Below, piece after piece: positions 3,835-31,083 of a stretch of DNA of 57,907 bases (the first letter of the stretch is position 1; every line of letters begins with the position of its first letter). The position numbers were made by a program, and so were the translations under genes. Below the pieces are notes generated by a model. That model did not search any database. It was given only the letters and a program-made list of their open reading frames with translations, and had not been told where the DNA came from. This stretch comes from Macrostomum lignano (lineage: Eukaryota), in assembly GCA_002269645.1 (NCBI GenBank), contig NIVC01002924.1, forward strand, positions 1-57,907, given 5' to 3'.

Positions 3835-4960
3835 ATTTCTGCCCTCTCTTGTCTACCCAATTACTGCCCTCTCTTGTCCACCCAATCACTGCCCTCTCTT
3901 GTCTACCCAATTACTGCCCTCTCTTGTCCACCCAATCACTGCCCTCTCTTGTCTACCCAATCACTGCCCTCTCTTGTCCACCCAATCACTGCCCTCTCTT
4001 GTCTACCCAATCACTGCCCTCTCTTGTCTACCCAATCACTGCCCTCTCTTGTCTACCCAATCACTGCCCTCTCTTGTCTACCCAATCACTGCCCTCTCTT
4101 GTCTACCCAATCACTGCCCTCTCTTGTCTACCCAATCACTGCCCTCTCTTGTCTACCCAATCACTGCCCTCTCTTGTCTACCCAATCACTGCCCTCTCTT
4201 GTCTACCCAATCACTGCCCTCTCTTGTCTACCCAATCACTGCCCTCTCTTGTCTACCCAATCACTGCCCTCTCTTGTCTACCCAATCACTGCCCTCTCTT
4301 GTCTACCCAATCACTGCCCTCTCTTGTCTACCCAATCACTGCCCTCTCTTGTCTACCCAATCACTGCCCTCTCTTGTCTACCCAATCACTGCCCTCTCTT
4401 GTCTACCCAATCACTGCCCTCTCTTGTCTACCCAATCACTGCCCTCTCTTGTCTACCCAATCACTGCCCTCTCTTGTCTACCCAATGACTACTCTCTACT
4501 ATCTACCCAATGGCTACTCCAGCTCTCCGATCTACTCAATGACTACTCAAGCTCTCCGATCTACTCAATGACTACTCTAGCTCTCCGATCTACTCAATGA
4601 CTACTCTAGCTCTCCGATCTACTCAATGACTACTCTAGCTCTCCTATCCACTCAATGACTACTCTAGCTCTCCAATTTAGCCAACCGAATAACTACTCTC
4701 TCTTATTTACCCAATGGCTACTCTAGCTCTCCTATCTACCCAATGACTACCCTCTCCTATCTACCCAATAACTACCCTCTCCTATCTACCCAATGACTAC
4801 CCTCTCCTATCTACCCAATGACTACCCTCTCCTATCTACCCAATGACTACCCTCTCCTAGCTACCCAATGACTACCCTCTCCTAGCTACCCAATGACTAC
4901 CCTCTCCTAGCTACCCAATGACTACCCACTCCTATCTACCCAATGACTACCCTCTCTAAT
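3835..4960. repeat. 25-bp minisatellite (CCCAATCACTGCCCTCTCTTGTCTA) grading into related 29- and 25-bp units
   Basis: Near-perfect units to about 4490, then CTACTCAATGACTACTCTAGCTCTCCGAT and CTACCCAATGACTACCCTCTCCTAT variants. Confidence 0.92.
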
Positions 4961-19294: not shown

Positions 19295-19591
19295 TCATCT
19301 CCGTTTCTTTTTCTGAGCAGCGGCCAGATGCTGCTTCCTGTTGTTGGACACGTGGCCGGCTGTTGCGGTTGCCGGCCGAGTTCCGGCTGTCGAGTTGCCG
19401 ACGCTGCCGCCGTACTCGGCTTCGTCGGCTTCGCCCATCGAGGCGGTGTCGCTGGAAGCGGCTGGCGGCAGGCAGAACAGAGCCAGCAGGCAGGCCAGCT
19501 GGAACAGGGCGCCTATGAGCAGCGCCCGGTCCGACAGCAGCTCGTACCAGGTGGCTGGCGGGATGAACAGCGAGCTGTCCTGGTCTGGCAT
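19295..19591 (-). CDS. MANBAL: MANBAL / UPF0239 small single-pass membrane protein (98 aa)
   Basis: IPPATWYELLSDRALLIGALFQLACLLALFCLP parallels the remembered MANBAL motif ([29 protein letters not shown]), with a basic KKKRR C-terminus; intronless CDS. Confidence 0.85.
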   Translation of the reverse strand: MPDQDSSLFIPPATWYELLSDRALLIGALFQLACLLALFCLPPAASSDTASMGEADEAEYGGSVGNSTAGTRPATATAGHVSNNRKQHLAAAQKKKRR

Positions 19592-19659
19592 GGCTGCAAC
19601 ATGCGGCGGCGGATAGGGCTGGACTATCGCTCAGTACTGGGATGGTGCGAGGGGTGTCT

Positions 19660-20000
19660 TGGATGCTACAGGCAGGGTAGAGGGACGGGGTGTCCTGGAT
19701 GCCACAGTCAGGGTAGCGGGACGGGGTGTCCTGGATGCCACAGTCAGGGTAGCGGAAAGGGTGTCCTGGGTGCTACAGGCAGGATAGCGGGAAGGGTGTG
19801 CTGGGTGCCACAGGCAGGGTAGCGGGAAGGATGTGCTGGGTGCTACAGGCAGGATAGCGGGAAGGATGTGCTGGGTGCCACAGGCAGGATAGCGGGAAGG
19901 GTGTGCTGGGTGCCACAGGCAGGGTAGCGGGAAGGATGTGCTGGGTGCTACAGGCAGGATAGCGGGAAGGATGTGCTGGGTGCCACAGGCAGGGTAGCAG
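19660..20000. repeat. 35-bp minisatellite (AGGATGTGCTGGGTGCTACAGGCAGGATAGCGGGA)
   Basis: Tandem units between the METTL25B and MANBAL coding regions. Confidence 0.9.
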
Positions 20001-20503
20001 GAACAGGAAGGGAGAGCCAAGGCTTCAATGCAAGAATCAATTGAAAATAAGACTGGGCCTAGCGGTGCTACCAGACTCATGCGAGCGCAGAGTCTACATG
20101 TTGAAGAGGAGATAAGAATGGGAAGAAAAATCAATGAAAGCCAGAGAGAAATTTTGCGCATTGAAACTACGAAAGGATTTTCACAGTCCAAAGCTTTGTT
20201 GATAAAAGAATTCTCCCTGTTTGAGGCGGGGGTTGGGTGGGTCAAAAACCCGGAAAATTCAATACTCTGCATTTCTCCGCGGCTCTCAATAGGGCCTGAT
20301 TGACAGCTAAGGGTGTATATATAAAGTACAAGCAAGTTTCAGGGCCCATACGCGGTAAGAGTAGTATATTCAAATAGTCAATAATTAATGAATATGACTT
20401 CATAAAAGCTTCAGATTACCGAAGAAATTCTGGACTATATTTATTACAAAATGCAATTTGAAATGATAAATTTTGCATGAATCAGGTAGTTCACTGCATA
20501 ATC

Positions 20504-21927
20504 CTAGGACTTCTTGGCTACAATAGCCAAGCATCTGGGCGACAGTTCGGGCGAGAACAGCTGCAACAGCTCCGCAGCTACTCCCCTCTCTCTAAGGTAC
20601 AACTGAAAGTCAACTAAAAGTACAAACTCCAAAACCGGCCTCAGCAGAGTCTGCAATCGATAAACCAGCTCAGCAAGGCGAAGGTCCCCAGTTCGAGTCT
20701 CGGTCTCCCAGACAGTCAGAAGGCGACCCCGAATTGTCGGCCAGTCGACGTCGCCGTTGTCATGACGACCGGCTGCCTCGTCCAGAGCGGCCAGGTAGGC
20801 GGCGAAATCTCCATCGGCTGCAGGCGGGCGGATGCGCCGCAGCAGGCGGTCGGCGTCAGGGCGGGCGGCCAGCTGCAGCGCGGCCCGGCGCAGGGTGGCG
20901 TCAATTCGAGCCTGCAGCCTCGTCCTGCCCGTTGCTCCTAGGGGCAGCAGCAGCAGAGTCTCCAGACGCTCCTGGCAGGCCAGCCGACGGGCCGGGACGC
21001 TGGCGAATAGGCGGGCCAAGCCGGGCAGGCGCGACAAAGCGGCGCTGACTGGCGCTGAGTGCGCGGACTTGTGATAGCAGCAGGGCAGGCAGATCAGGCT
21101 GCGCAGCCGCTGGCTGGAGGCGAACAAATCCACCAGAGTGTTGGACAGGGAGCCGCAGGCGTGCTGGCCCAGCGCCAACACCGGACTCGAATTGTCCATC
21201 CCGGCTGACAGGCGGTCCAACGCCGACTCAACTGCCAGGCGACAGTCGCGGCCGGGCCGCAGCTCCAGGCACAGCGTGGCGTCGGCATCGGACGAGGCCA
21301 ACAGGCGAGCGTCGCGATCGATCAGCAGTGTCCGAGTGTCCGGAAACTGGCTGGACAGCAGGCGGCCGAACCGGCCGACTCCGGCGCCAACGTCCAGCAG
21401 GATTAGGGATGATGATGATGATGAGGAATCGCCGGAGCCACCAGCCAGGCCGGACTCGCCGATGTAGGCCAGCAGCCTCTCGGCCTCGTGCCGCTTCTTT
21501 GGCCGCAGCCGGCGGTACTGGTTTGACGCTGAGCGGGATGGTGGCGGCGGATTAAAGACGGCCGTCTGCTCGGCGATGTCGGACAGGCAGGAGAACAGCT
21601 CGTCAAGGTGCAGCTGCGTCCCGATGCTCTCGGCTGGCAGGGGCCTACCGGACACAGCGGCATTCAGACAGGCGTCGATCGCTTCAATCAGGCAGTCGGC
21701 GTCCTCCGCGGCCACGCGACCTCGCCAGGGCCGCACCAGCAGCGCGTCTGTCCAAGCGAAATCAACCGACCACCACAGCTGGTCGAGCAGGCGGTCCAGC
21801 CGGTCCAGAAGGCCAGACAGGCGCGGACTGATGCCTGCGAGCGATGACTGGAATGTGTGCGCAGCGGCGGGATTCGGCTGTTTGTACCTTTTGCTTCTTT
21901 GGTATAGCGATGAGCAGCGACTACTAG
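20504..21927 (-). CDS. METTL25B: METTL25B/RRNAD1-like SAM-dependent methyltransferase (Methyltransf_32 family); one long exon, start codon not identified
   Basis: RLRPKKRHEAERL, LLDVGAGVG (motif I), GQHACGSLS, LPCCYHK, RRLACQ and FSPELSPRCLAIVAKK match remembered RRNAD1 motifs (VRPKKQHE, GLHACGDLS, LSPELSPRN). The only in-frame ATG lies downstream of motif I, so the 5' coordinate is provisional. Confidence 0.82.
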
Positions 21928-21954
21928 CTACAAGGCGGAGTGACAGATTCACTC

Positions 21955-22340
21955 CTGAGACAGGGGACTGAGTCTCACTCCTGAGACACGGGAGTGAGTC
22001 TCAATCCTGAGACAGGGGACTGAGTCTCAATCCTGAGACACGGGAGTGAGTCTCAATCCAGAGACAGGGGACTGAGTCTCAATCCTGAGACAGGGGACTG
22101 AGTCTCAATCCTGAGATAGGGGACTGAGTCTCAATCCTGAGACAGGGGAGTGAGCCTCAATCCAGAGACAGGGGAGTGAGTCTCAATCCAGAGACAGGGG
22201 AGTGAGTCTCAATCCTGAGACAGGGGAGTGAGTCTCAATCCTGAGACAGGGGAGTGAGTCTCAATCCTGAGACAGGGGAGTGACAGTCTCAATCCTGAGA
22301 CAGGGAGTGACAACTAAACCCGGGACAGGGGAGTGACAGC
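21955..22340. repeat. 26-bp minisatellite with an internal inverted repeat (GAGTCTCAATCCTGAGACAGGGGACT)
   Basis: Each unit contains GTCTCA-atcc-TGAGAC. Confidence 0.9.
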
Positions 22341-22664
22341 TAAACCGAACAAAACAAACAAGAAAACAAATCAGGACTCAGTAACGCAGCATCGGTAATA
22401 ACAGATGAAATGCACAATTGACTGTATATTTATAACTTACACAATAGAATTGAATTTCGCAAGAATGTACTTTAACGAACCAACTGAGCAAATGCCACAA
22501 TTATACGAGCAACAGACAGACTTGAAAATCGCATATTTGTACCAAGTTGAGTGCAATTTTTAAAAAATATGTAAATGAATTGATCAAACATCTGCACTCT
22601 TCAACATCACTAAACAAAATAGCAATAATCGTAAGTTCTTCAGAGTTCAGTCTCACCAATAATA

Positions 22665-22972
22665 TTGCGTAACTGATTTCAGTCTCACCAATAATATTGC
22701 TTCACTGATTTCAGTCTCACCAATAATATTGCGTCACTGATTTCAGTCTCACCAATAATATTGCGTCACTGATTTCAGTCTCACTAATAATATTGCGTCA
22801 CTGATTTCAGTCTCACCAATAATATTGCGTCACTGATTTCAGTCTCACCAATAATATTGCGTCACTGATTTCAGTCTCACCAATAATATTGCGTCACTGA
22901 TTTCAGTCTCACCAATAATATTGCGTCACTGATTTCAGTCTCACCAATAATATTGCGTCACTGATTTCAGGG
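22665..22972. repeat. 32-bp minisatellite (GATTTCAGTCTCACCAATAATATTGCGTCACT) just 3' of the NSUN4 stop
   Basis: About 9-10 tandem units. Confidence 0.92.
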
Positions 22973-23018
22973 TCACCCGACAACCCGACAACACAAGCCA
23001 CAGTCTCAATCTTCATCT

Positions 23019-26000
23019 TCAATCCACCCGTTTCAATTTGCACACAAAGCTCGGTCCATAATTAGCCAGCAGGTGCGGCAGCACCAGCAGCCCCACTTGG
23101 CGGCTCTGCACCCGGCAGCCGGCGCCAGCCAGCAGGCTGGCCAGCGGCCGCAGGTCCACCAGCTTGAATGCCGGCTGCAGTTTAGCCAGAGCAGACAGCA
23201 CAACAGCCTCATTCTGTGCTGGTGACATTGTGCAGGTTGAGTAGACCAAGCTGGCTCCCGGACGGCAGGCCGCGGCGCCGGCTAGAAGCAGCTGGAGCTG
23301 ACTGCAGGTGAATTTGTACATAAATAGATATTGATTGACAAAAATATCCCAATAACTCTACTCAAAGTAGTGCAAAACGCAAAATAATAATATTACGTAT
23401 TGGGCAGGCCGACTCTTTCTTTGCTGCGACGCCCGCTAAACAGGTCGGCCTCGGGATCGTTCAACGAGTGTCGATCTCCCGAGCAGGTGGGATCAACTAG
23501 AACGCGATCGAATGAGTTCAGGGGATAAGCGCCACTGTTTAGCGCGTTGGCGTACAGCTGCGAAACTGAGCAGCCGGCTAGCACTGACGGCGGCACGTGC
23601 GAGCTTAGCAGGCGGGCGAGGCGGCTGGATCTGGGGATGGCGGGCGCATCAGCTTGAGTAGTGAGATCGGCGTGTGAGCAGATAGCTACTCAGATCAGTG
23701 TGTGAGCAGATAGCTACTCAGATCAGTGTGTGAGCGAGCAGATGGCTACTCAGATCAGTGTGTGAGCAGATAGCTACTCAGATCAGTGTGTGAGCAGATA
23801 GCTACTCAGATCAGTGTGTGAGCAGATAGCTACTCAGATCAGTGTGTGAGCAGATAGCTACTCAGATCAGTGTGTGAGCAGATAGCTACTCAGATCAGTG
23901 TGTGAGCAGATAGCTACTCAGATCAGTGTGTGAGCTAGCAGATAGCTACTCAGATCAGTGTGTGAGCTAGCAGATAGCTACTCAGATCAGTGTGTGAGCT
24001 AGCAGATAGCTACTCAGATCAGTGTGTGAGCTAGCAGATAGCTACTCAGATCAGTGTGTGAGCAGATAGCTACTCAGATCAGTGTGTGAGCAGATAGCTA
24101 CTCAGATCAGTGTGTGAGCAGATAGCTACTCAGATCAGTGTGTGAGCAGATAGCTACTCAGATCAGTGTGTGAGCAGATAGCTACTCAGATCAGTGTGTG
24201 GGCTAGCAGATAGCTACTCAGATCAGTGTGTGAGCAGATAGCTACTCAGATCAGTGTGTGAGCAGATAGCTACTCAGATCAGTGTGTGAGCAGATAGCTA
24301 CTCAGATCAGTGTGTGAGCAGATAGCTACTCAGATCAGTGTGTGAGCAGATAGCTACTCAGATCAGTGTGTGAGCAGATAGCTACTCAGATCAGTGTGTG
24401 AGCTAGCAGATAGCTACTCAGATCAGTGTGTGAGCTAGCAGATAGCTACTCAGATCAGTGTGTGAGCTAGCAGATAGCTACTCAGATCAGTGTGTGAGCA
24501 GATAGCTACTCAGATCAGTGTGTGAGCAGATAGCTACTCAGATCAGTGTGTGAGCAGATAGCTACTCAGATCAGTGTGTGAGCAGATAGCTACTCAGATC
24601 AGTGTGTGAGCAGATAGCTACTCAGATCAGTGTGTGGGCTAGCAGATAGCTACTCAGATCAGTGTGTGAGCAGATAGCTACTCAGATCAGTGTGTGAGCA
24701 GATAGCTACTCAGATCAGTGTGTGAGCAGATAGCTACTCAGATCAGTGTGTGAGCAGATAGCTACTCAGATCAGTGTGTGAGCAGATAGCTACTCAGATC
24801 AGTGTGTGAGCAGATAGCTACTCAGATCAGTGTGTGAGCTAGCAGATAGCTACTCAGATCAGTGTGTGAGCTAGCAGATAGCTACTCAGATCAGTGTGTG
24901 AGCTAGCAGATAGCTACTCAGATCAGTGTGTGAGCAGATAGCTACTCAGATCAGTGTGTGAGCAGATAGCTACTCAGATCAGTGTGTGAGCAGATAGCTA
25001 CTCAGATCAGTGTGTGAGCAGATAGCTACTCAGATCAGTGTGTGAGCAGATAGCTACTCAGATCAGTGTGTGGGCTAGCAGATAGCTACTCAGATCAGTG
25101 TGTGAGCAGATAGCTACTCAGATCAGTGTGTGAGCAGATAGCTACTCAGATCAGTGTGTGAGCAGATAGCTACTCAGATCAGTGTGTGAGCAGATAGCTA
25201 CTCAGATCAGTGTGTGAGCAGATAGCTACTCAGATCAGTGTGTGAGCAGATAGCTACTCAGATCAGTGTGTGAGCAGATAGCTACTCAGATCAGTGTGTG
25301 AGCTAGCAGATAGCTACTCAGATCAGTGTGTGGGCTAGCAGATAGCTACTCAGATCGGTGTGAGCAGATAGCTACTCAGATCAGTGCGAGCATAGCACAC
25401 TCAATGAGGTTAAGAAAGCAAAACACACAAGGCAGCGCAGACCTAGCGGAGGACTTGTCCAAGCATAGCATTTGTCCTGGCAGTGCCTGCTGCAGCAGAC
25501 AATAGGCCTTTGACCCGGGAGCGGAGCACAGGTCTAGCACCGAGTCGCCATCGCCTGGGCAAAGGGCCAAGGCGGCGGCCACAGAGCCGAGATCCATTGG
25601 CAAATAGGGGCACAGGCCGGTGGTTTGATCTGGCTTTGGCCGGGGGAACCACCTGTGTGTGTGTAAGGTTCTTTAATCATTTGCCTGCCACTGGAATTCT
25701 AGCTTGACTAGCAGAGTTTTGTGTATAGCTAATGTACTTTTTCCTCCTAAATTTCTTCATTGTGCGTGTTAGAACCAACAGAACGGGTTGCTTCTACAGA
25801 ATGGGTTGCTTCTACAGAATGGGTTGCTTCTACAGAATGGGTTGCTTCTACAGAATGGGTTGCTTCTACAGAATGGGTTGCTTCTACAGAATGGGTTGCT
25901 TCTACAGAATGGGTTGCTTCTACAGAATGGGTTGCTTCTACAGAATGGGTTGCTTCTACAAAATGGGTTGCTTCTACAAAATGGGTTGCTTCTACAGAAT

Positions 26001-28867
26001 GGGTTGCTTCTACAGAATGGGTTGCTTCTACAGAATGGGTTGCTTCTACAGAATGGGTTGCTTCTACAGAATGGGTTGCTTCTACAGAATGGGTTGCTTC
26101 TACAGAATGGGTTGCTTCTACAGAATGGGTTGCTTCTACAACAACAACAAAATACGCTGTCATGATGGTAAAAGTCAGCGTCACAGGGCGCGCTTCATGG
26201 CTTGGGCGCGAACAAAGGCCGCGCCACCGGCAGTGTCCGGGGCGCCGGCGTCAGCCAGCAGACAGTCGACATAACGCCGAGTTCGCGCTTGACCTCGCCG
26301 GTAGGGTGCCTGCAGCGTGAGCAGCAGCACCTCCTGCACCGGCTGTGGGCAGTACGACTCGGCGCGGATGAGATGGCCTGCGAGCTGGAGTCGCCGACGG
26401 CGCAGTAGATCACTTGGACGTGGCAGGCCAGCGCGGCGATAGAGCTTCTACAGAATGGGTTGCTTCTACAGAATGGGTTGCTTCTACAGAATGGGTTGCT
26501 TCTACAGAATGGGTTGCTTCTACAAAATGGGTTGCTTCTACAAAATGGGTTGCTTCTACAAAATGGGTTGCTTCTACAGAATGGGTTGCTTCTACAGAAT
26601 GGGTTGCTTCTACAGAATGGGTTGCTTCTACAGAATGGGTTGCTTCTACAGAATGGGTTGCTTCTACAAAATGGGTTGCTTCTACAAAATGGGTTGCTTC
26701 TACAGAATGGGTTGCTTCTACAGAATGGGTTGCTTCTACAGAATGGGTTGCTTCTACAGAATGGGTTGCTTCTACAGAATGGGTTGCTTCTACAGAATGG
26801 GTTGCTTCTACAGAATGGGTTGCTTCTACAGAATGGGTTGCTTCTACAGAATGGGTTGCTTCTACAGAATGGGTTGCTTCTACAGAATGGGTTGCTTCTA
26901 AAGAATGGGCTGCATTTTTCAAGACAATTGCTTAATAATATACCTTATTAGATTATTTAAGAACCATTTAGGTTATTCTAAAGCTAAAATAAGCCTTATA
27001 CATTTCAAAATTTTTAACTTCACCTGTCACTGCCATCCGGCTTCATCAGCTGATGCTGCACGCTAGATGGGAAGGCGAACACCTGCAGAGTGGGCGAAAT
27101 GGTCTGGTCACTAGGCAGCCACAGCTCGGGATCAGCGGGATCAATCAGACTACACGAGTCATCGGTTGAGCCGTCGTGAACAGCGCTATCGGACAGGGCC
27201 AGAGAGGCCCGGCCGCGAGGGTCCATCTCGGTGATGAACTCGGTGGCAGGCAGAAATTCGTTCAAGTTCGATCGGGAATCCGCAGCTGCGGCTGAGGAGG
27301 CGGCGAATGTGGCCGCTTCGAGGCGATCGTAGCTGAGCACTTTTAACTCGGCTGAACGCTCGGAGAGCTGATGAGGCTGACCAGCTGCCGGTGATTCGAA
27401 CGATTCCTCGGCGCTCTCCGGCCAAGCCTGCAAACGGCGCCTCCAATCGGGCGCCAAATCTTCGGCGCCTAAGGTAAGAAGCCGCGTCTCTGCGGCAGCC
27501 TGCAATTAAAATTGGCTATCAATTGGTTTAGGGCTACTATAAGTAGCAACATGAGAAAATCGAATCAGCAATCAGATCAAACTGAATCAGCAATCAGATC
27601 AAACTGAATCAGCAATCAGATCAAACTGAATCAGCAATCAGATCAAACTGAATCAGCAATCAGATCAAACTGAATCAGCAATCAGATCAAACTGAATCAG
27701 CAATCAGATCAAACTGAATCAGCAATCAGATCAAACTGAATCAGCAATCAGATCAAACTGAATCAGCAATCAGATCAAACTGAATCAGCAATCAGATCAA
27801 ACTGGATCAGCAATCAGATCAAACTGAATCAGCAATCAGATCAAACTGAATCAGCAATCAGATCAAACTGAATCAGCAATCAGATCAAACTGAATCAGCA
27901 ATCAGATCAAACTGAATCAGCAATCAGATTAAACTGAATCAGCAATCAGATCAAACTGAATCAGCAATCAGATCAAACTGGATCAGCAATCAGATCAAAC
28001 TGAATCAGCAATCAGATCAAACTGAATCAGCAATCAGATCAAACTGAATCAGCAATCAGATCAAACTGAATCAGCAATCAGATCAAACTGAATCAGCAAT
28101 CAGATCAAACTGAATCAGCAATCAGATCAAACTGAATCAGCTATCAGATCCAATTGAATCAGCAATCACATCCAATTAAATCAGCAATCAGATCCAATTA
28201 AATCAGCAATCAGATCAAACTAAATCAGCAATCAGAACAAACTGAATCAGCAATCAGAACAAACTGAATCAGCAAATGAACAGATTAATTATCTGATTGA
28301 CACAGAATGCATTGCTTGATTCACATAGAATCGAGTACCTGATAACCTGATTCACATATAATCATATAATGCATTACCTGATTCACACAGAATGCATTAC
28401 CTGATTCACACAGAATGCATTACCTGATTCACACAGAATGCATTACCTGATTCACACAGAATGCATTACCTGATTCACACAGAATGCATTACCTGATTCA
28501 CACAGAATGCATTACCTGATTCACACAGAATGCATTACCTGATTCACACAGAATGCATTACCTGATTCACATAGAACCGGTTCAGCACAGCGACATGCCT
28601 AGGCTGGGACAGCAGAGCCAGACGGATTGATGGCCAGAGCTCAGGCCCAAACTCCGGCCCATAGATCTGGTCAAAGTGGGCCAGAGCTCTACGACCCCAC
28701 TGGGTCAGGAGGGCGCCAGTGGCTGTGGGTGGCTGGTCAAACATACGCTGGACAGCCCAACGTGGTTGCAACTCAGCATCCTGATGCTGCTGCTGTTTCT
28801 TTGCCTGCTTTCGATTGCTGGCAGAAGACATTGCAACAGTGGAGTGCACTGAGCGCCTGGCTGCCAT
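23019..28867 (-). CDS. NSUN4: NSUN4-like mitochondrial RNA m5C methyltransferase, 5 exons, 502 aa predicted
   Basis: Exons 28867-28562, 27499-27024, 25652-25443, 23630-23397 and 23301-23019 all have GT-AG boundaries and matching phases (0,2,2,2), totalling 1509 nt. Motifs LWPSIRLALLS, MDLGSVAAALAL, VLDLCSAPGSK, DRVLVDPTC, DRHSL, YSTC and ANYGPSFVCKLKR follow NSUN4. Confidence 0.92.
23680..25385. repeat. 28/32-bp minisatellite (GCAGATAGCTACTCAGATCAGTGTGTGA) with a 436-bp higher-order period, filling NSUN4 intron 3
   Basis: A rare GGGCTAG variant recurs at about 24200, 24636 and 25072. Confidence 0.95.
25785..26900. repeat. 18-bp minisatellite (AGAATGGGTTGCTTCTAC) split in two by a LINE fragment
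   Basis: Arrays at about 25785-26140 and 26444-26900 share the same unit. Confidence 0.93.
26141..26443 (-). mobile_element. 5'-truncated RTE-like non-LTR retrotransposon (ORF2 C-terminus, 3' UTR and (TTG)n tail)
   Basis: A minus frame missing from the ORF track (26444-26181) reads LYRRAGLPRPSDLLRRRRLQLAGHLIRAESYCPQPVQEVLLLTLQAPYRRGQARTRRYVDCLLADAG, the RRLxxAGHxxR...P...RGxxR..Y/WxD pattern of RTE ORF2 ends. A microsatellite tail follows, and GCTTCTACA is repeated on both flanks. Confidence 0.78.
27560..28275. repeat. 22-bp minisatellite (AATCAGCAATCAGATCAAACTG) in NSUN4 intron 1
   Basis: Tandem units seen directly. Confidence 0.94.
28370..28576. repeat. 23-bp minisatellite made of the NSUN4 exon 1/intron 1 junction
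   Basis: The minus-strand unit TTCTGTGTGAATCAG|GTAATGCA equals the last 15 nt of the exon (one mismatch) plus the first 8 nt of the intron; about 8-9 copies. Confidence 0.9.
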
Positions 28868-31083
28868 TATGCACAAGTAACTGCGATGGTGATAATGGCT
28901 TGCTAGGGCTGCAGTGCTTGGCATTTTCCTGATGATAATAGTGATTTAATAACATAAATAATGTAAAGTATATTATCTTTCTTAGAAATTCAGAAAAAAT
29001 AATTCAAGAACATTATCTCAAATTACTAACACTTATTTGTTTGAAGTCAATTCTAGAATATTGAATAATAGACAATGAAAAATAGGGGGTTTCTCAATCT
29101 AAAGTCAATTTGACACTAGGGCACTCAAGAGTAAGAAACTAGGAGCCCAGGAGAGATAAAGGAATAACCAATTAGAAAGTAGCAAGGCAGAAAAGATAAA
29201 CATTTTATGCTAAGTAAATAATTAAGAATTGGATTGAGTTCAATAAGGTAAATAGAAAGAAGAAATCATGAATAGGTAAACAAAATATTGGTTAAGAATA
29301 TAATATAAAAGTTGCAACACTTAGTAAAAATGGTCTTAGCCTAATAATACAGAGAGCTTTTGACTTATTTACTTAGACTTAGCAATAGGGCAATCCCAGA
29401 ATGGGAAAGTATGAAAACCTATTATACTAATCCTTTTATATAGATAGTTCAATAGACCTAGATTTTTAAAAAAGCCTATCTAATTAGATGCTATTATAAT
29501 TATTTATATATGTTATATATTACAATTCTACAATTCTATAGTTGTTCTAGATATAGTTATAGATTAGATACCTGTTATAGTTATATAACAATATATAGTT
29601 ATATTTAGTTATATATCTATTATATCTAGCTATATATCTAGAAACCTTTTAAAAAATCATTTCTCTTTTTATTTTCAAATTTTAAATGCACTTTCTTTCT
29701 TTTGATTTGTTAATTGCTACTTATTTATATAAATTATTATTTCTTTTCTTATGTTTTTAATGCTTTCTTTTCATTTTATTCATTTAATTTTTATGCTTTA
29801 TGCTATGTATCCCAATACACTTTTTGGTACTTAGTTGATTGATTTGCAATATATCCACAAAGGCTACCTTGTTACCTAATTCGACTGGCTTTTTTAGTCA
29901 GGTATTGCACATTTACGACTATGATTATAATTAAGTATATATTAGACTTAATCCTAAAACTATATTTAATTGGACTAATAAAACAACTTCTTTATATAAA
30001 AACATTTAATATTATTTTTAAAATATAGTATACTTGATCTTTTTAACACCTTAGAACAAAGCCTTTTGGATTTCTAATATTAGGCCTAATATTAGATTTT
30101 CTAATATAGTTTAGTTGATCCTTTTGACACTATAGACTAAAGACTATCAGATTTTTAATGCAATTTTTTTAAATTCCATTATACTAAAAATGGTTTGTTA
30201 GTATCTATCTATCTATGTGATCAATTAGAGAAAAATTACTATTAAAGTTGGTATATATTAATATTATAGGGCCTACTTTTATATAATATAGTATTTTCAT
30301 TTGTTTTTTATTCTTTGGCATTTGATCTACAAACAAATTTATTTCATAATGTCTTGGTACATATAGAACATGATCCTGACTAGGCTTATCTCAAGAGAAA
30401 GAAACATCACTATCTTATTGCAACTGATCAGTTGCAGCTGCAACCTGCAATGGAGTTTGAGTGACTGGACCATGCATGAGGACTAAGGGGGGGGGGTATT
30501 AGAAGTTGTATATTCATTGTTTTAGAAAATCAAAAATCAGTCGCTTAGTGCGTTTTTTATTCGTAAAACACAGATTTAATTCACCAGAATTAAATATCCC
30601 AGTGAGTAAATGTGAATGTCCAGGGTAGGCCAGGCCACAACCACCAGTACAGTAGTAGGTAGAGTCAAGGCTGTTAAAAAATTCAAGTAAACCTATCCAC
30701 AAAGAAAACAACAAGTCGTATAACAGGCTTTAAAATAATGATAATAACGAGAAAATGAATAAATTATTAATAATATTAATAATAACATCACTATCTTCAT
30801 ATATAGATGGCTCTTTAATAAATTTTTAGCAAGTAAATAATTTTCTTATAAAATGCCATGTTAAAAGGGGAATAAAGGTATTAGTTAGTTAAACAAAATT
30901 TACTCTCATCATTTCCTAGACCATTTCCATTATTTTTTTAGCTAAATCTACTTTAGATAAACTATTAAACTCATAATTTTTCTTTACTGTAATTATATTT
31001 TATTGTCCGAGATTCGTACTCTTAGGTTTTTACTAACAGTAACATAAAAGGAAATTTACGTACAAATCTTTATAGTTTATAGA

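What the first reader, a model, noticed from the sequence alone, without database searches (positions are those of the whole stretch)
21840..21952. METTL25B has no usable ATG: the initiator may come from the spliced leader's terminal AUG
The 482-codon frame contains one ATG, located after the SAM-binding motif. Two phase-0 acceptors sit just where family homology begins: AAACAG|CCG (exon start 21877) and TTCCAG|TCA (21847). Flatworm spliced leaders end in AUG, which is known to act as the initiator Met for some schistosome mRNAs; joined at either site it would be in frame. The alternative is a micro-exon ATGCTGC|GTTACT near 22390 spliced to the phase-1 acceptor at 21927, but that donor is weak.
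Basis: partly seen in the sequence, partly recalled or inferred. Interest (0 to 1): 0.72.

Follow-up and report, generated by a model that had tools for sequence, protein, structure and literature searches.

The report
Flatworm methyltransferase gene borrowing spliced-leader AUG
A Macrostomum lignano methyltransferase gene (METTL25B/RRNAD1-like) has no start codon of its own and most likely gets it from the AUG at the end of the trans-spliced leader, a mechanism already known from schistosomes, so this is a clean new example and not a new kind of thing.

Summary
The window is a whole contig (NIVC01002924.1) of the Macrostomum lignano Mlig_3_7 assembly. The minus-strand frame 21952..20504 has a single in-frame ATG, at codon 252 (21199), which lies after the SAM motif. 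Phase-0 AG acceptors sit at 21847 and 21877.

- The published M. lignano SL is 35 nt and ends in ATG.
- TTCCAG|TCA at 21847 is the only match to the published trans-acceptor motif [T/C]TNCAG in the 1171 nt after the upstream gene.
- The deposited CDS of this gene, and of three tandem paralogs, is 5'-partial and starts exactly at that base. Given how the annotation pipeline works, this places the transcript 5' end at the acceptor.
- The N-terminal Met of METTL25B/RRNAD1 homologues aligns within a few residues of where the SL Met would fall.

I could reach no transcript reads, so the SL junction itself was not seen. The paralogs carry TG instead of AG at this site, which is unexplained.

SL-AUG initiation has been known since Cheng et al. 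2006, and Macrostomum annotators have noted it. I judge this a new member of a known kind, of modest interest.

The parts
20504..21847 (-). Single coding exon of the METTL25B/RRNAD1-like gene as deposited: 447 codons plus the TAG stop, 5'-partial, first codon TCA (Ser). With the SL AUG added, the product is 448 aa and begins MSSLAGISPR...
   Evidence: This exact translation is in the protein collection as an NCBI protein on a 57907-bp contig. Pfam Methyltransf_32 match. SL-to-exon junction translated.
21848..21853 (-). TTCCAG, the proposed SL trans-splice acceptor (AG at 21849-21848). The exon starts at 21847 in phase 0.
   Evidence: It fits the motif [T/C]TNCAG from PMC8629364. It is the only motif match between 23018 and 21848. 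It coincides with the deposited CDS start.
21878..21883 (-). AAACAG, a second phase-0 acceptor (exon start 21877). A possible minor or alternative SL site that would add PNPAAAHTFQ after the Met.
   Evidence: It does not fit the motif at positions -6 and -5. The 10 codons 21877-21848 have a coding-like GC3 of 0.70. The paralogs read AAGCAG here.
21848..21952 (-). 35 open codons upstream of the acceptor, with no ATG. Most likely outron (removed by trans-splicing), not coding sequence.
   Evidence: GC3 of 21952-21878 is 0.48, equal to the lowest 25-codon window anywhere in the CDS, whose median is 0.76. Homologues have no counterpart to these residues.
21197..21199 (-). The only in-frame ATG (codon 252 of the 482-codon frame). 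It lies after the SAM-binding motif, so it cannot start a functional enzyme.
21374..21400 (-). SAM-binding motif I, LLDVGAGVG (codons 185-193).
   Evidence: D187, G189 and G191 are invariant and G193 nearly invariant in the 12-sequence family alignment.
22386..22392 (-). Judged unlikely.
   Evidence: The donor matches 4 of 6 consensus positions. The sequence is present upstream of paralog L003 but absent within 5 kb upstream of L001 and L002. It is not in the deposited gene model.
21949..22336 (.). 26-bp tandem repeat (14.9 copies) filling most of the proximal upstream region (outron or intergenic).
22646..22977 (.). 32-bp tandem repeat (10.4 copies) just downstream of the upstream gene's stop. 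On the minus strand each unit carries a donor-like GGTGAGA.
23019..28924 (-). Upstream same-strand gene: NSUN-type RNA m5C methyltransferase (Methyltr_RsmB-F), 521 aa, with its own ATG at 28924. Probable operon partner.
   Evidence: The CDS-to-acceptor gap is 1171 nt, or about 451 nt after subtracting the two tandem repeats. That is under the 1-kb operon criterion of PMC8629364.
20440..20445 (-). AATAAA poly(A) signal 59 nt after the stop codon.

Best explanation
The gene is a single-exon METTL25B/RRNAD1-like SAM-dependent methyltransferase of Macrostomum lignano, and its mature mRNA is made by spliced-leader trans-splicing. The pre-mRNA comes either from a polycistronic transcript with the upstream NSUN gene or from the gene's own promoter. 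It carries an outron that ends at TTCCAG (21853-21848). The spliceosome joins the 35-nt SL (...AATTTATTGCATG) to base 21847. The SL's 3'-terminal AUG then sits directly in front of TCA TCG CTC, in frame, as the first and only AUG upstream of the catalytic domain. The 5' UTR is 32 nt long. Ribosomes start at that AUG and make a 448-aa protein beginning MSSLAGISPR....

Without trans-splicing no full-length protein can start at an AUG. The next AUGs on the RNA are out of frame (21663, 21288) or lie beyond the SAM motif (21199).

Shown here: the sequence features, the frame, the motif match, the start of the deposited CDS, and the alignment of homologue N-termini.

Inferred: that SL reads define the transcript end, that the SL AUG is actually used, and that the gene belongs to an operon.
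For: - Organism and SL: the best hit is M. lignano at 98% identity, and the window is contig NIVC01002924.1. The SL is CGGTCTCTTACTGCGAAGACTCAATTTATTGCATG, and the trans-acceptor motif is [T/C]TNCAG (PMC8629364).
- Frame: SL joined to 21847 reads ATG TCA TCG ... = MSSLAG.... The SL contains no other ATG.
- Acceptor: 21847 is the only motif match in the 1171 nt after the NSUN stop.
- Annotation: the deposited CDS in the window and in three paralog copies is 5'-partial and starts at this exact base. The pipeline cuts transcripts at peaks of SL-trimmed reads and then runs TransDecoder (PMC5730564). Because the frame stays open up to 22000, a 5'-partial ORF that starts at 21847 requires the transcript to start at 21847-21849.
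- A further point from the paralogs: L001 and L002 have in-frame ATGs about 100 codons upstream in an open frame. These were still not annotated, which shows that those transcript models are also cut at this base.
- Homologues: the N-terminal Met of METTL25B/RRNAD1 relatives aligns to residues 32-36 of the 482-codon frame, and the SL Met would be residue 35. Periplaneta METTL25B residues 23-439 align to residues 19-446 of the 447-aa product.
- Composition: GC3 falls from 0.76 in the CDS to 0.48 upstream of 21878.
- Precedent: flatworm SLs end in AUG, and in S. mansoni more than 40 cDNAs need it as initiator (Cheng et al. 2006, as cited in PMC9851317 and PMC12582326). The Macrostomum SL ATG is called a likely start codon in PMC10468722.
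Against: - I could examine no SL-containing read, cDNA or ribosome footprint. The M-prefixed proteins are not in the protein collection.
- Not every 5'-partial CDS in this annotation marks an SL site. The downstream 91-aa gene starts at 19570 with no AG in front of it.
- The three tandem paralogs read TTCCTG, with no AG, at the same base, yet are annotated identically. Their boundary was therefore projected from multi-mapping reads or transcripts, and it is not proven which genomic copy supplies the SL reads.
- The AUG context is poor by vertebrate standards (U at -3, U at +4).
- The 10 codons between 21877 and 21848 look coding-like (GC3 0.70), so 21877 cannot be excluded as an alternative site.
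- dN/dS between the window copy and the paralog is not clearly low (8 non-synonymous and 5 synonymous codon differences).
Confidence: 0.75

Rival explanations
1. A cis-spliced upstream exon with its own ATG is spliced to 21847, 21877 or 21927. It could be the reader's micro-exon at 22392-22386 or an exon hidden among the tandem repeats. On this reading the deposited model is simply truncated at an exon boundary, because reads do not map through the repeats.
For: Candidate ATG-plus-donor combinations exist in silico. The best donor is TTG|GTGAGA, repeated in every unit of the 32-bp repeat. ATGs lie at 23016, 22591, 22534 and 22392. Tandem repeats cover about 60% of the upstream 1.2 kb, which can break transcript assembly (PMC8629364).
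Against: The micro-exon donor GTTACT is weak. The micro-exon is absent upstream of paralogs L001 and L002, where similarity to the window ends at 21957. None of the candidate exons encodes anything that matches the homologues, whose N-termini already align at 21847. The deposited models in all four copies start at the acceptor. The ATG at 23016 lies 3 nt after the stop codon of the upstream gene.
Confidence: 0.1
2. SL trans-splicing does supply the AUG, but mainly at the other phase-0 acceptor, 21877 (AAACAG|CCG). This gives MPNPAAAHTFQSSLAG.... In the TG-bearing paralogs it would be the only usable site.
For: It is in frame. The 10 codons 21877-21848 have GC3 0.70. The paralogs lack the AG at 21847 but keep an AG here, as AAGCAG.
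Against: It does not fit [T/C]TNCAG, having A at -6 and -5, and it has no pyrimidine tract. The deposited CDS does not start here. A transcript starting at 21877 would have given a longer 5'-partial ORF.
Confidence: 0.08
3. The locus is not translated into a full-length enzyme. It may be a decaying duplicate that lost its start codon, or it may use a non-AUG start (for example GTG 21952) or the internal Met252.
For: The gene family is recently amplified: there are three identical tandem copies on another contig. The window copy and the paralog differ by 8 non-synonymous and 5 synonymous codons. The nearly invariant Asp of the HACGD motif is Ser here.
Against: A 447-codon frame is intact in all four copies. 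It keeps the family's invariant K/E, DxGxG, HxCG, CCxH and SPR residues end to end. Starting at Met252 would delete the SAM site. The residues encoded by 21952-21848 have no counterpart in homologues and show a non-coding-like GC3.
Confidence: 0.05

Closest known systems
SL 3'-terminal AUG as initiator methionine in Schistosoma mansoni mRNAs (Cheng, Cohen, Ndegwa & Davis 2006, J Biol Chem 281:733). Such ORFs are called 'slORFs' in PMC9851317.
   Same: A flatworm SL ends in AUG. The acceptor lies directly in front of the first sense codon, in frame. The genomic ORF has no ATG of its own ahead of the conserved domain.
   Different: The organism is a free-living macrostomorph, not a parasitic neodermatan. 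Here the use of the AUG is inferred from sequence and annotation, whereas in S. mansoni it was shown by cDNA analysis and translation assays (as reported). The original paper was not available to me.
[quoted passage not shown] 2017, PMC5730564; Ustyantsev & Berezikov 2021, PMC8629364).
   Same: The acceptor motif is [T/C]TNCAG. The same-strand upstream gene lies less than 1 kb away after repeat adjustment. The gene is conserved, with a human homologue family, and that class is enriched among trans-spliced genes.
   Different: Those studies did not analyse whether the SL ATG is needed as a start codon. This gene is a case where it appears obligatory.
METTL25B / RRNAD1 (Pfam PF13679, Methyltransf_32).
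   Same: End-to-end similarity of 28-30% (E about 1e-25) to insect METTL25B. SAM motif I and the HACG, CCYHK and SPRC motifs are conserved.
   Different: The Asp of HACGD is replaced by Ser. There is a Ser-rich insert before motif I. The gene has no ATG of its own. Orthology to METTL25B as opposed to METTL25 was not resolved.

Membership tests
SL-AUG-initiated flatworm mRNA (slORF, Cheng et al. 2006) | The species' spliced leader ends in AUG. | tested here: met
   The organism was identified as M. lignano. The published 35-nt SL ends ...TTGCATG (PMC8629364; PMC5173321).
SL-AUG-initiated flatworm mRNA (slORF, Cheng et al. 2006) | The mRNA is SL trans-spliced at a defined acceptor. | tested here: inconclusive
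   The evidence is indirect. The deposited 5'-partial CDS starts exactly after TTCCAG. The pipeline cuts transcripts at SL-read peaks. This is the only motif match in 1171 nt. No reads could be inspected, and the paralogs have TG at the site.
SL-AUG-initiated flatworm mRNA (slORF, Cheng et al. 2006) | The SL AUG is in frame with the conserved ORF. | tested here: met
   The acceptor is phase 0. The junction translates to MSSLAGISPR....
SL-AUG-initiated flatworm mRNA (slORF, Cheng et al. 2006) | No genomic in-frame AUG is available upstream of the conserved domain in the mature mRNA. | tested here: met
   The only in-frame ATG is codon 252, after the SAM motif. The first AUGs downstream of the junction (21663, 21288) are out of frame.
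SL-AUG-initiated flatworm mRNA (slORF, Cheng et al. 2006) | Translation demonstrably starts at the SL AUG. | not testable with these tools
   This needs ribosome profiling, N-terminal proteomics or a reporter assay.
METTL25B/RRNAD1 (Methyltransf_32) | Match to Pfam PF13679 above the gathering score. | tested here: met
   40.2 bits against a cut-off of 27, E=4.2e-10, residues 152-295.
METTL25B/RRNAD1 (Methyltransf_32) | SAM-binding motif I and the family's conserved Cys/His motifs. | tested here: met
   D187, G189, G191, H264, C266, G267, C291, C292 and H294 are invariant in the alignment. S471, P472 and R473 are nearly invariant. D268 is Ser in this protein.
METTL25B/RRNAD1 (Methyltransf_32) | Full-length similarity to proteins named METTL25B or RRNAD1. 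| tested here: met
   741 library hits at E<=1e-3. Named hits are METTL25B (Periplaneta, Bacillus rossius) and RRNAD1 (Amphibalanus). BLASTP gives E=8e-26 over residues 19-446.
METTL25B/RRNAD1 (Methyltransf_32) | Orthology to METTL25B and not to the paralog METTL25. | not tested
   No phylogeny or reciprocal search against vertebrate METTL25 and METTL25B was run.
M. lignano operon (criteria of PMC8629364) | Adjacent same-strand genes, repeat-adjusted gap under 1 kb, downstream gene SL trans-spliced. | tested here: inconclusive
   The NSUN CDS ends at 23019 and the acceptor is at 21847, a gap of 1171 nt. Subtracting repeats of 388 and 332 nt leaves about 451 nt. The NSUN 3' end is unknown. There is no AATAAA or ATTAAA in the gap, and TATAAATA at 22434 could instead be a promoter.

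The most novel reading that the evidence does not exclude
This gene depends entirely on trans-splicing for its start codon. That would make it the first documented SL-AUG-dependent gene in a free-living, early-branching flatworm, and would imply that donating the initiator is an ancestral function of the platyhelminth SL AUG. In addition, the natural AG/TG difference at the acceptor between the window copy and three tandem paralogs would act as a switch. TG copies would either be untranslatable or shift to the in-frame acceptor 30 nt upstream, giving a 10-residue longer N-terminus.
Probability: 0.3. Interest if true: 0.45.

Novelty: new member of a known kind. Interest (0 to 1): 0.3.

Why it matters
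It explains why this gene, and probably many others in the M. lignano annotation, is deposited as '5'-partial'. The protein is complete once the SL's AUG is added, so annotation pipelines that trim the whole SL systematically lose the start codon.

It also gives a simple test case in a transgenic-capable flatworm for whether the conserved AUG at the end of platyhelminth spliced leaders is used as an initiator outside the parasitic lineages. The naturally occurring AG-to-TG variant serves as a built-in control.

It does not reveal a new mechanism.

Tried and rejected
- I looked for transcript-derived versions of the protein. Exact look-ups of M+P0001, M+P0002 and the 21877- and 21952-started products found none in the collection. 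The homology search returned only the NCBI paralog and no Logan fragments. I ran no further search on the N-terminal fragment, because identical fragments would already have ranked at the top.
- I searched supplementary files of PMC5816591 and PMC5730564 for Mlig009456, RRNAD1 and METTL25. There were no occurrences.
- Cheng et al. 2006 and Wasik et al. 2015 are not held, so they are cited only through papers that quote them.
- The SL sequence does not occur in the window, even with up to 3 mismatches, so there is no SL RNA gene or assembled cDNA here.
- I inspected the 5' flanks of two distant Logan homologues (L005, L006) for SL-like sequence in front of their ATG. Nothing was found, and the organisms are unknown.
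- Rejected: Met252 as the start, because it would remove the SAM site.
- Rejected: the 35 upstream codons as coding, because of low GC3 and no homologue counterpart.
- Rejected: the micro-exon at 22392, because of its weak donor and its absence upstream of two of the three paralog copies.
- The dN/dS comparison between copies was uninformative (13 differing codons).

Full report
**What the window is.** The 482-codon frame has one close relative in 5.8 billion proteins: a 447-aa "hypothetical protein BOX15_Mlig009456g1, partial" of Macrostomum lignano, 98% identical. An exact look-up showed that the translation of window 21847..20507 is itself an NCBI protein on a 57,907-bp contig. The window is therefore the whole contig NIVC01002924.1 of assembly GCA_002269645.1, Mlig_3_7.

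**Checking the observation.** On the minus strand the frame 21952..20504 is open for 482 codons. It is opened by GTG, and the frame stays open up to the TGA at 22003-22001.
- The only in-frame ATG is codon 252 (21199). It lies after the SAM motif LLDVGAGVG at codons 185-193.
Two more lie inside the 26-bp tandem repeat, at 21967 and 21973.
- The micro-exon ATGCTGC|GTTACT is at 22392-22386, and the phase-1 acceptor TTGTAG| is at 21927.
- Pfam Methyltransf_32 matches above its cut-off.
- A full HMMER scan gave 741 relatives. Those that carry names are METTL25B (cockroach, stick insect) or RRNAD1 (barnacle). BLASTP to Periplaneta METTL25B covers residues 19-446 of the 447-aa product at 28% identity, E=8e-26.

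**Is the spliced leader able to do this?** The M. lignano SL is a single 35-nt sequence, CGGTCTCTTACTGCGAAGACTCAATTTATTGCATG. About 30% of genes receive it, and the motif enriched at trans-splice acceptors is [T/C]TNCAG (PMC8629364; the sequence is also in PMC5173321). The SL has no other ATG. Joined at 21847 it reads ...TTGC ATG TCA TCG CTC = MSSLAGISPR.... Joined at 21877 it reads MPNPAAAHTFQSSLAG....

All reported flatworm SLs end in AUG. In S. mansoni this AUG is in frame in 28% of trans-spliced mRNAs and is required by more than 40 cDNAs (Cheng et al. 2006, as reported in PMC9851317 and PMC12582326; also PMC5832876). [quoted passage not shown]

**Which acceptor?** Only 21847 fits the motif: TTCCAG against AAACAG at 21877. 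On this strand the motif occurs once per about 305 nt. In the 1171 nt between the stop of the upstream gene (23019) and the gene there is exactly one match, the one at 21847. An in-frame motif match within about 30 nt of the place where homologues begin is expected by chance roughly 3% of the time.

**Evidence from the deposited annotation.** The Mlig_3_7 annotation was built in three steps: SL-containing reads were trimmed and mapped, transcripts were cut at the resulting peaks (TBONE), and ORFs were called with TransDecoder (PMC5730564).

The deposited CDS starts with Ser at 21847, so it is 5'-partial. The frame is open from 22000. A transcript beginning anywhere between 22000 and 21850 would therefore have given a longer partial ORF. 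One beginning upstream of 22003 would have given an ORF starting at Met252. So the annotated transcript begins at 21847-21849, exactly at the acceptor.

The three tandem paralogs on NIVC01001894.1 (L001-L003, 5.28 kb apart, CDS identical to one another) are annotated with the same first codon. In L001 and L002 the frame runs open for another about 120 codons upstream, through a different tandem repeat, and contains two in-frame ATGs. These were still not used. That again shows the transcript models are cut at this base.

This is good indirect evidence that SL-bearing reads end here, but it is not a direct sighting. One neighbouring gene (91 aa, 19570..19295) is also 5'-partial without any AG in front of it, so a partial CDS is not always an SL site.

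**Evidence from homologues.** In a 12-sequence alignment the N-terminal Met of the relatives falls at residues 32-36 of the 482-codon frame, and the SL Met would be residue 35. Recognisable similarity starts about 10-15 residues later, at LLDQLWWSVDFAWTD. The 35 residues encoded by 21952-21848 have no counterpart. GC3 is 0.48 for 21952-21878, equal to the lowest 25-codon window anywhere in the CDS. It is 0.70 for the 10 codons 21877-21848 and 0.76 for the CDS. Composition therefore puts the start of coding at or shortly before 21847 and cannot separate the two acceptors.

**The rival cis-exon.** An in-silico scan finds ATG-plus-donor combinations upstream that would join in frame. The only good donors (GGTGAGA) are copies within the 32-bp tandem repeat, and the ATG that would feed them lies 3 nt after the upstream gene's stop. 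It is present upstream of L003, but there is no copy within 5 kb upstream of L001 or L002, where similarity to the window stops at 21957. None of these exons is in the deposited models. I rate this rival at about 0.1.

**An unexplained point.** All three paralog copies read TTCCTG|TCA, with no AG, at the proposed site. They read AAGCAG|CCG at the 21877 site. Their identical annotation must then come from multi-mapping of SL-trimmed reads or of the de novo transcript; the pipeline allowed up to 1000 multi-maps. Either the window-type allele is the expressed, trans-spliced one, or the TG copies use the upstream in-frame acceptor, or the base is an assembly error. I could not decide between these.

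**Context.** The upstream same-strand gene is an NSUN-type RNA methyltransferase with its own ATG. The gap to the acceptor is 1171 nt, of which 720 nt is tandem repeat. That leaves about 451 nt, below the 1-kb repeat-adjusted operon criterion (PMC8629364). No AATAAA or ATTAAA lies in the gap, while an AATAAA follows the methyltransferase stop by 59 nt. A TATAAATA sits at 22434. The gene is thus plausibly the downstream member of an operon, which would make trans-splicing obligatory anyway, but an own promoter is not excluded.

**Mechanism and verdict.** The most likely mechanism (0.75): the outron ends at TTCCAG, the SL is joined at 21847, and the SL's terminal AUG is the initiator of a 448-aa METTL25B/RRNAD1-like enzyme. 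If scanning ribosomes skip that AUG, they next meet out-of-frame AUGs at 21663 and 21288, so trans-splicing is needed for any full-length product.

This is the mechanism described for schistosomes in 2006, and Macrostomum annotators have anticipated it. The finding is a well-supported new example, with one interesting wrinkle (the AG/TG acceptor difference among paralogs), and not a new kind of system. Interest 0.3.

Noticed in passing
L001:4995-5000, L002:4995-5000, L003:4995-5000 compared with window 21853-21848: The three tandem paralog copies on NIVC01001894.1 have TTCCTG where the window has the acceptor TTCCAG, yet their CDS is annotated from the same base. At the upstream site they have AAGCAG where the window has AAACAG.
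   Followed up: partly
L001:4635-5000 and L002:4635-5000: In two paralog copies the reading frame stays open about 120 codons upstream, through a 27/30-nt tandem repeat encoding DGSEDGT(E/D/Q)(C/Y)R units. It contains in-frame ATGs at 4701 and 4713. This is a potential conventional start that the annotation does not use.
   Followed up: partly
NIVC01001894.1, 180331-202240 (L001-L003): The methyltransferase gene plus a small UPF0239-like gene form a 5.28-kb unit repeated three times in tandem, with 100% identical CDS. The window contig carries a single unit. This could be recent duplication, a haplotype difference or an assembly artefact in this partly polyploid genome.
   Followed up: no
window 19295-19591 (-): The downstream 91-aa UPF0239-like CDS is deposited as starting at CTG 19570, although an in-frame ATG lies 7 codons upstream (19591). 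A motif-type acceptor TTGCAG| lies just before that ATG (exon start 19593). The paralog copies are annotated at 100 aa.
   Followed up: partly
window 21949-22336, 22646-22977, 19652-20003, 23664-23999: Four separate tandem-repeat arrays (periods 26, 32, 35 and 28 bp, 10-15 copies each) flank the gene and its neighbours. On the minus strand each 32-bp unit contains a consensus-like splice donor GGTGAGA.
   Followed up: no
window 22427-22434 (-) and 21848-23018: A perfect TATAAATA lies 587 nt upstream of the acceptor, in the only non-repetitive AT-rich stretch. There is no AATAAA or ATTAAA between the NSUN stop and the acceptor. Whether the gene has its own promoter or is read through from the NSUN gene is unresolved.
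   Followed up: no
window 23019-28924 (-) and 20504-21847 (-): Two unrelated methyltransferases, an NSUN-type RNA m5C enzyme and a METTL25B/RRNAD1-like enzyme, are adjacent on the same strand. They may be co-transcribed.
   Followed up: no
window 21149-21151 (codon 268 of the 482-codon frame): The nearly invariant Asp of the family's HACGD motif is Ser in this protein (HACGS). A run of seven Ser residues precedes SAM motif I.
   Followed up: no
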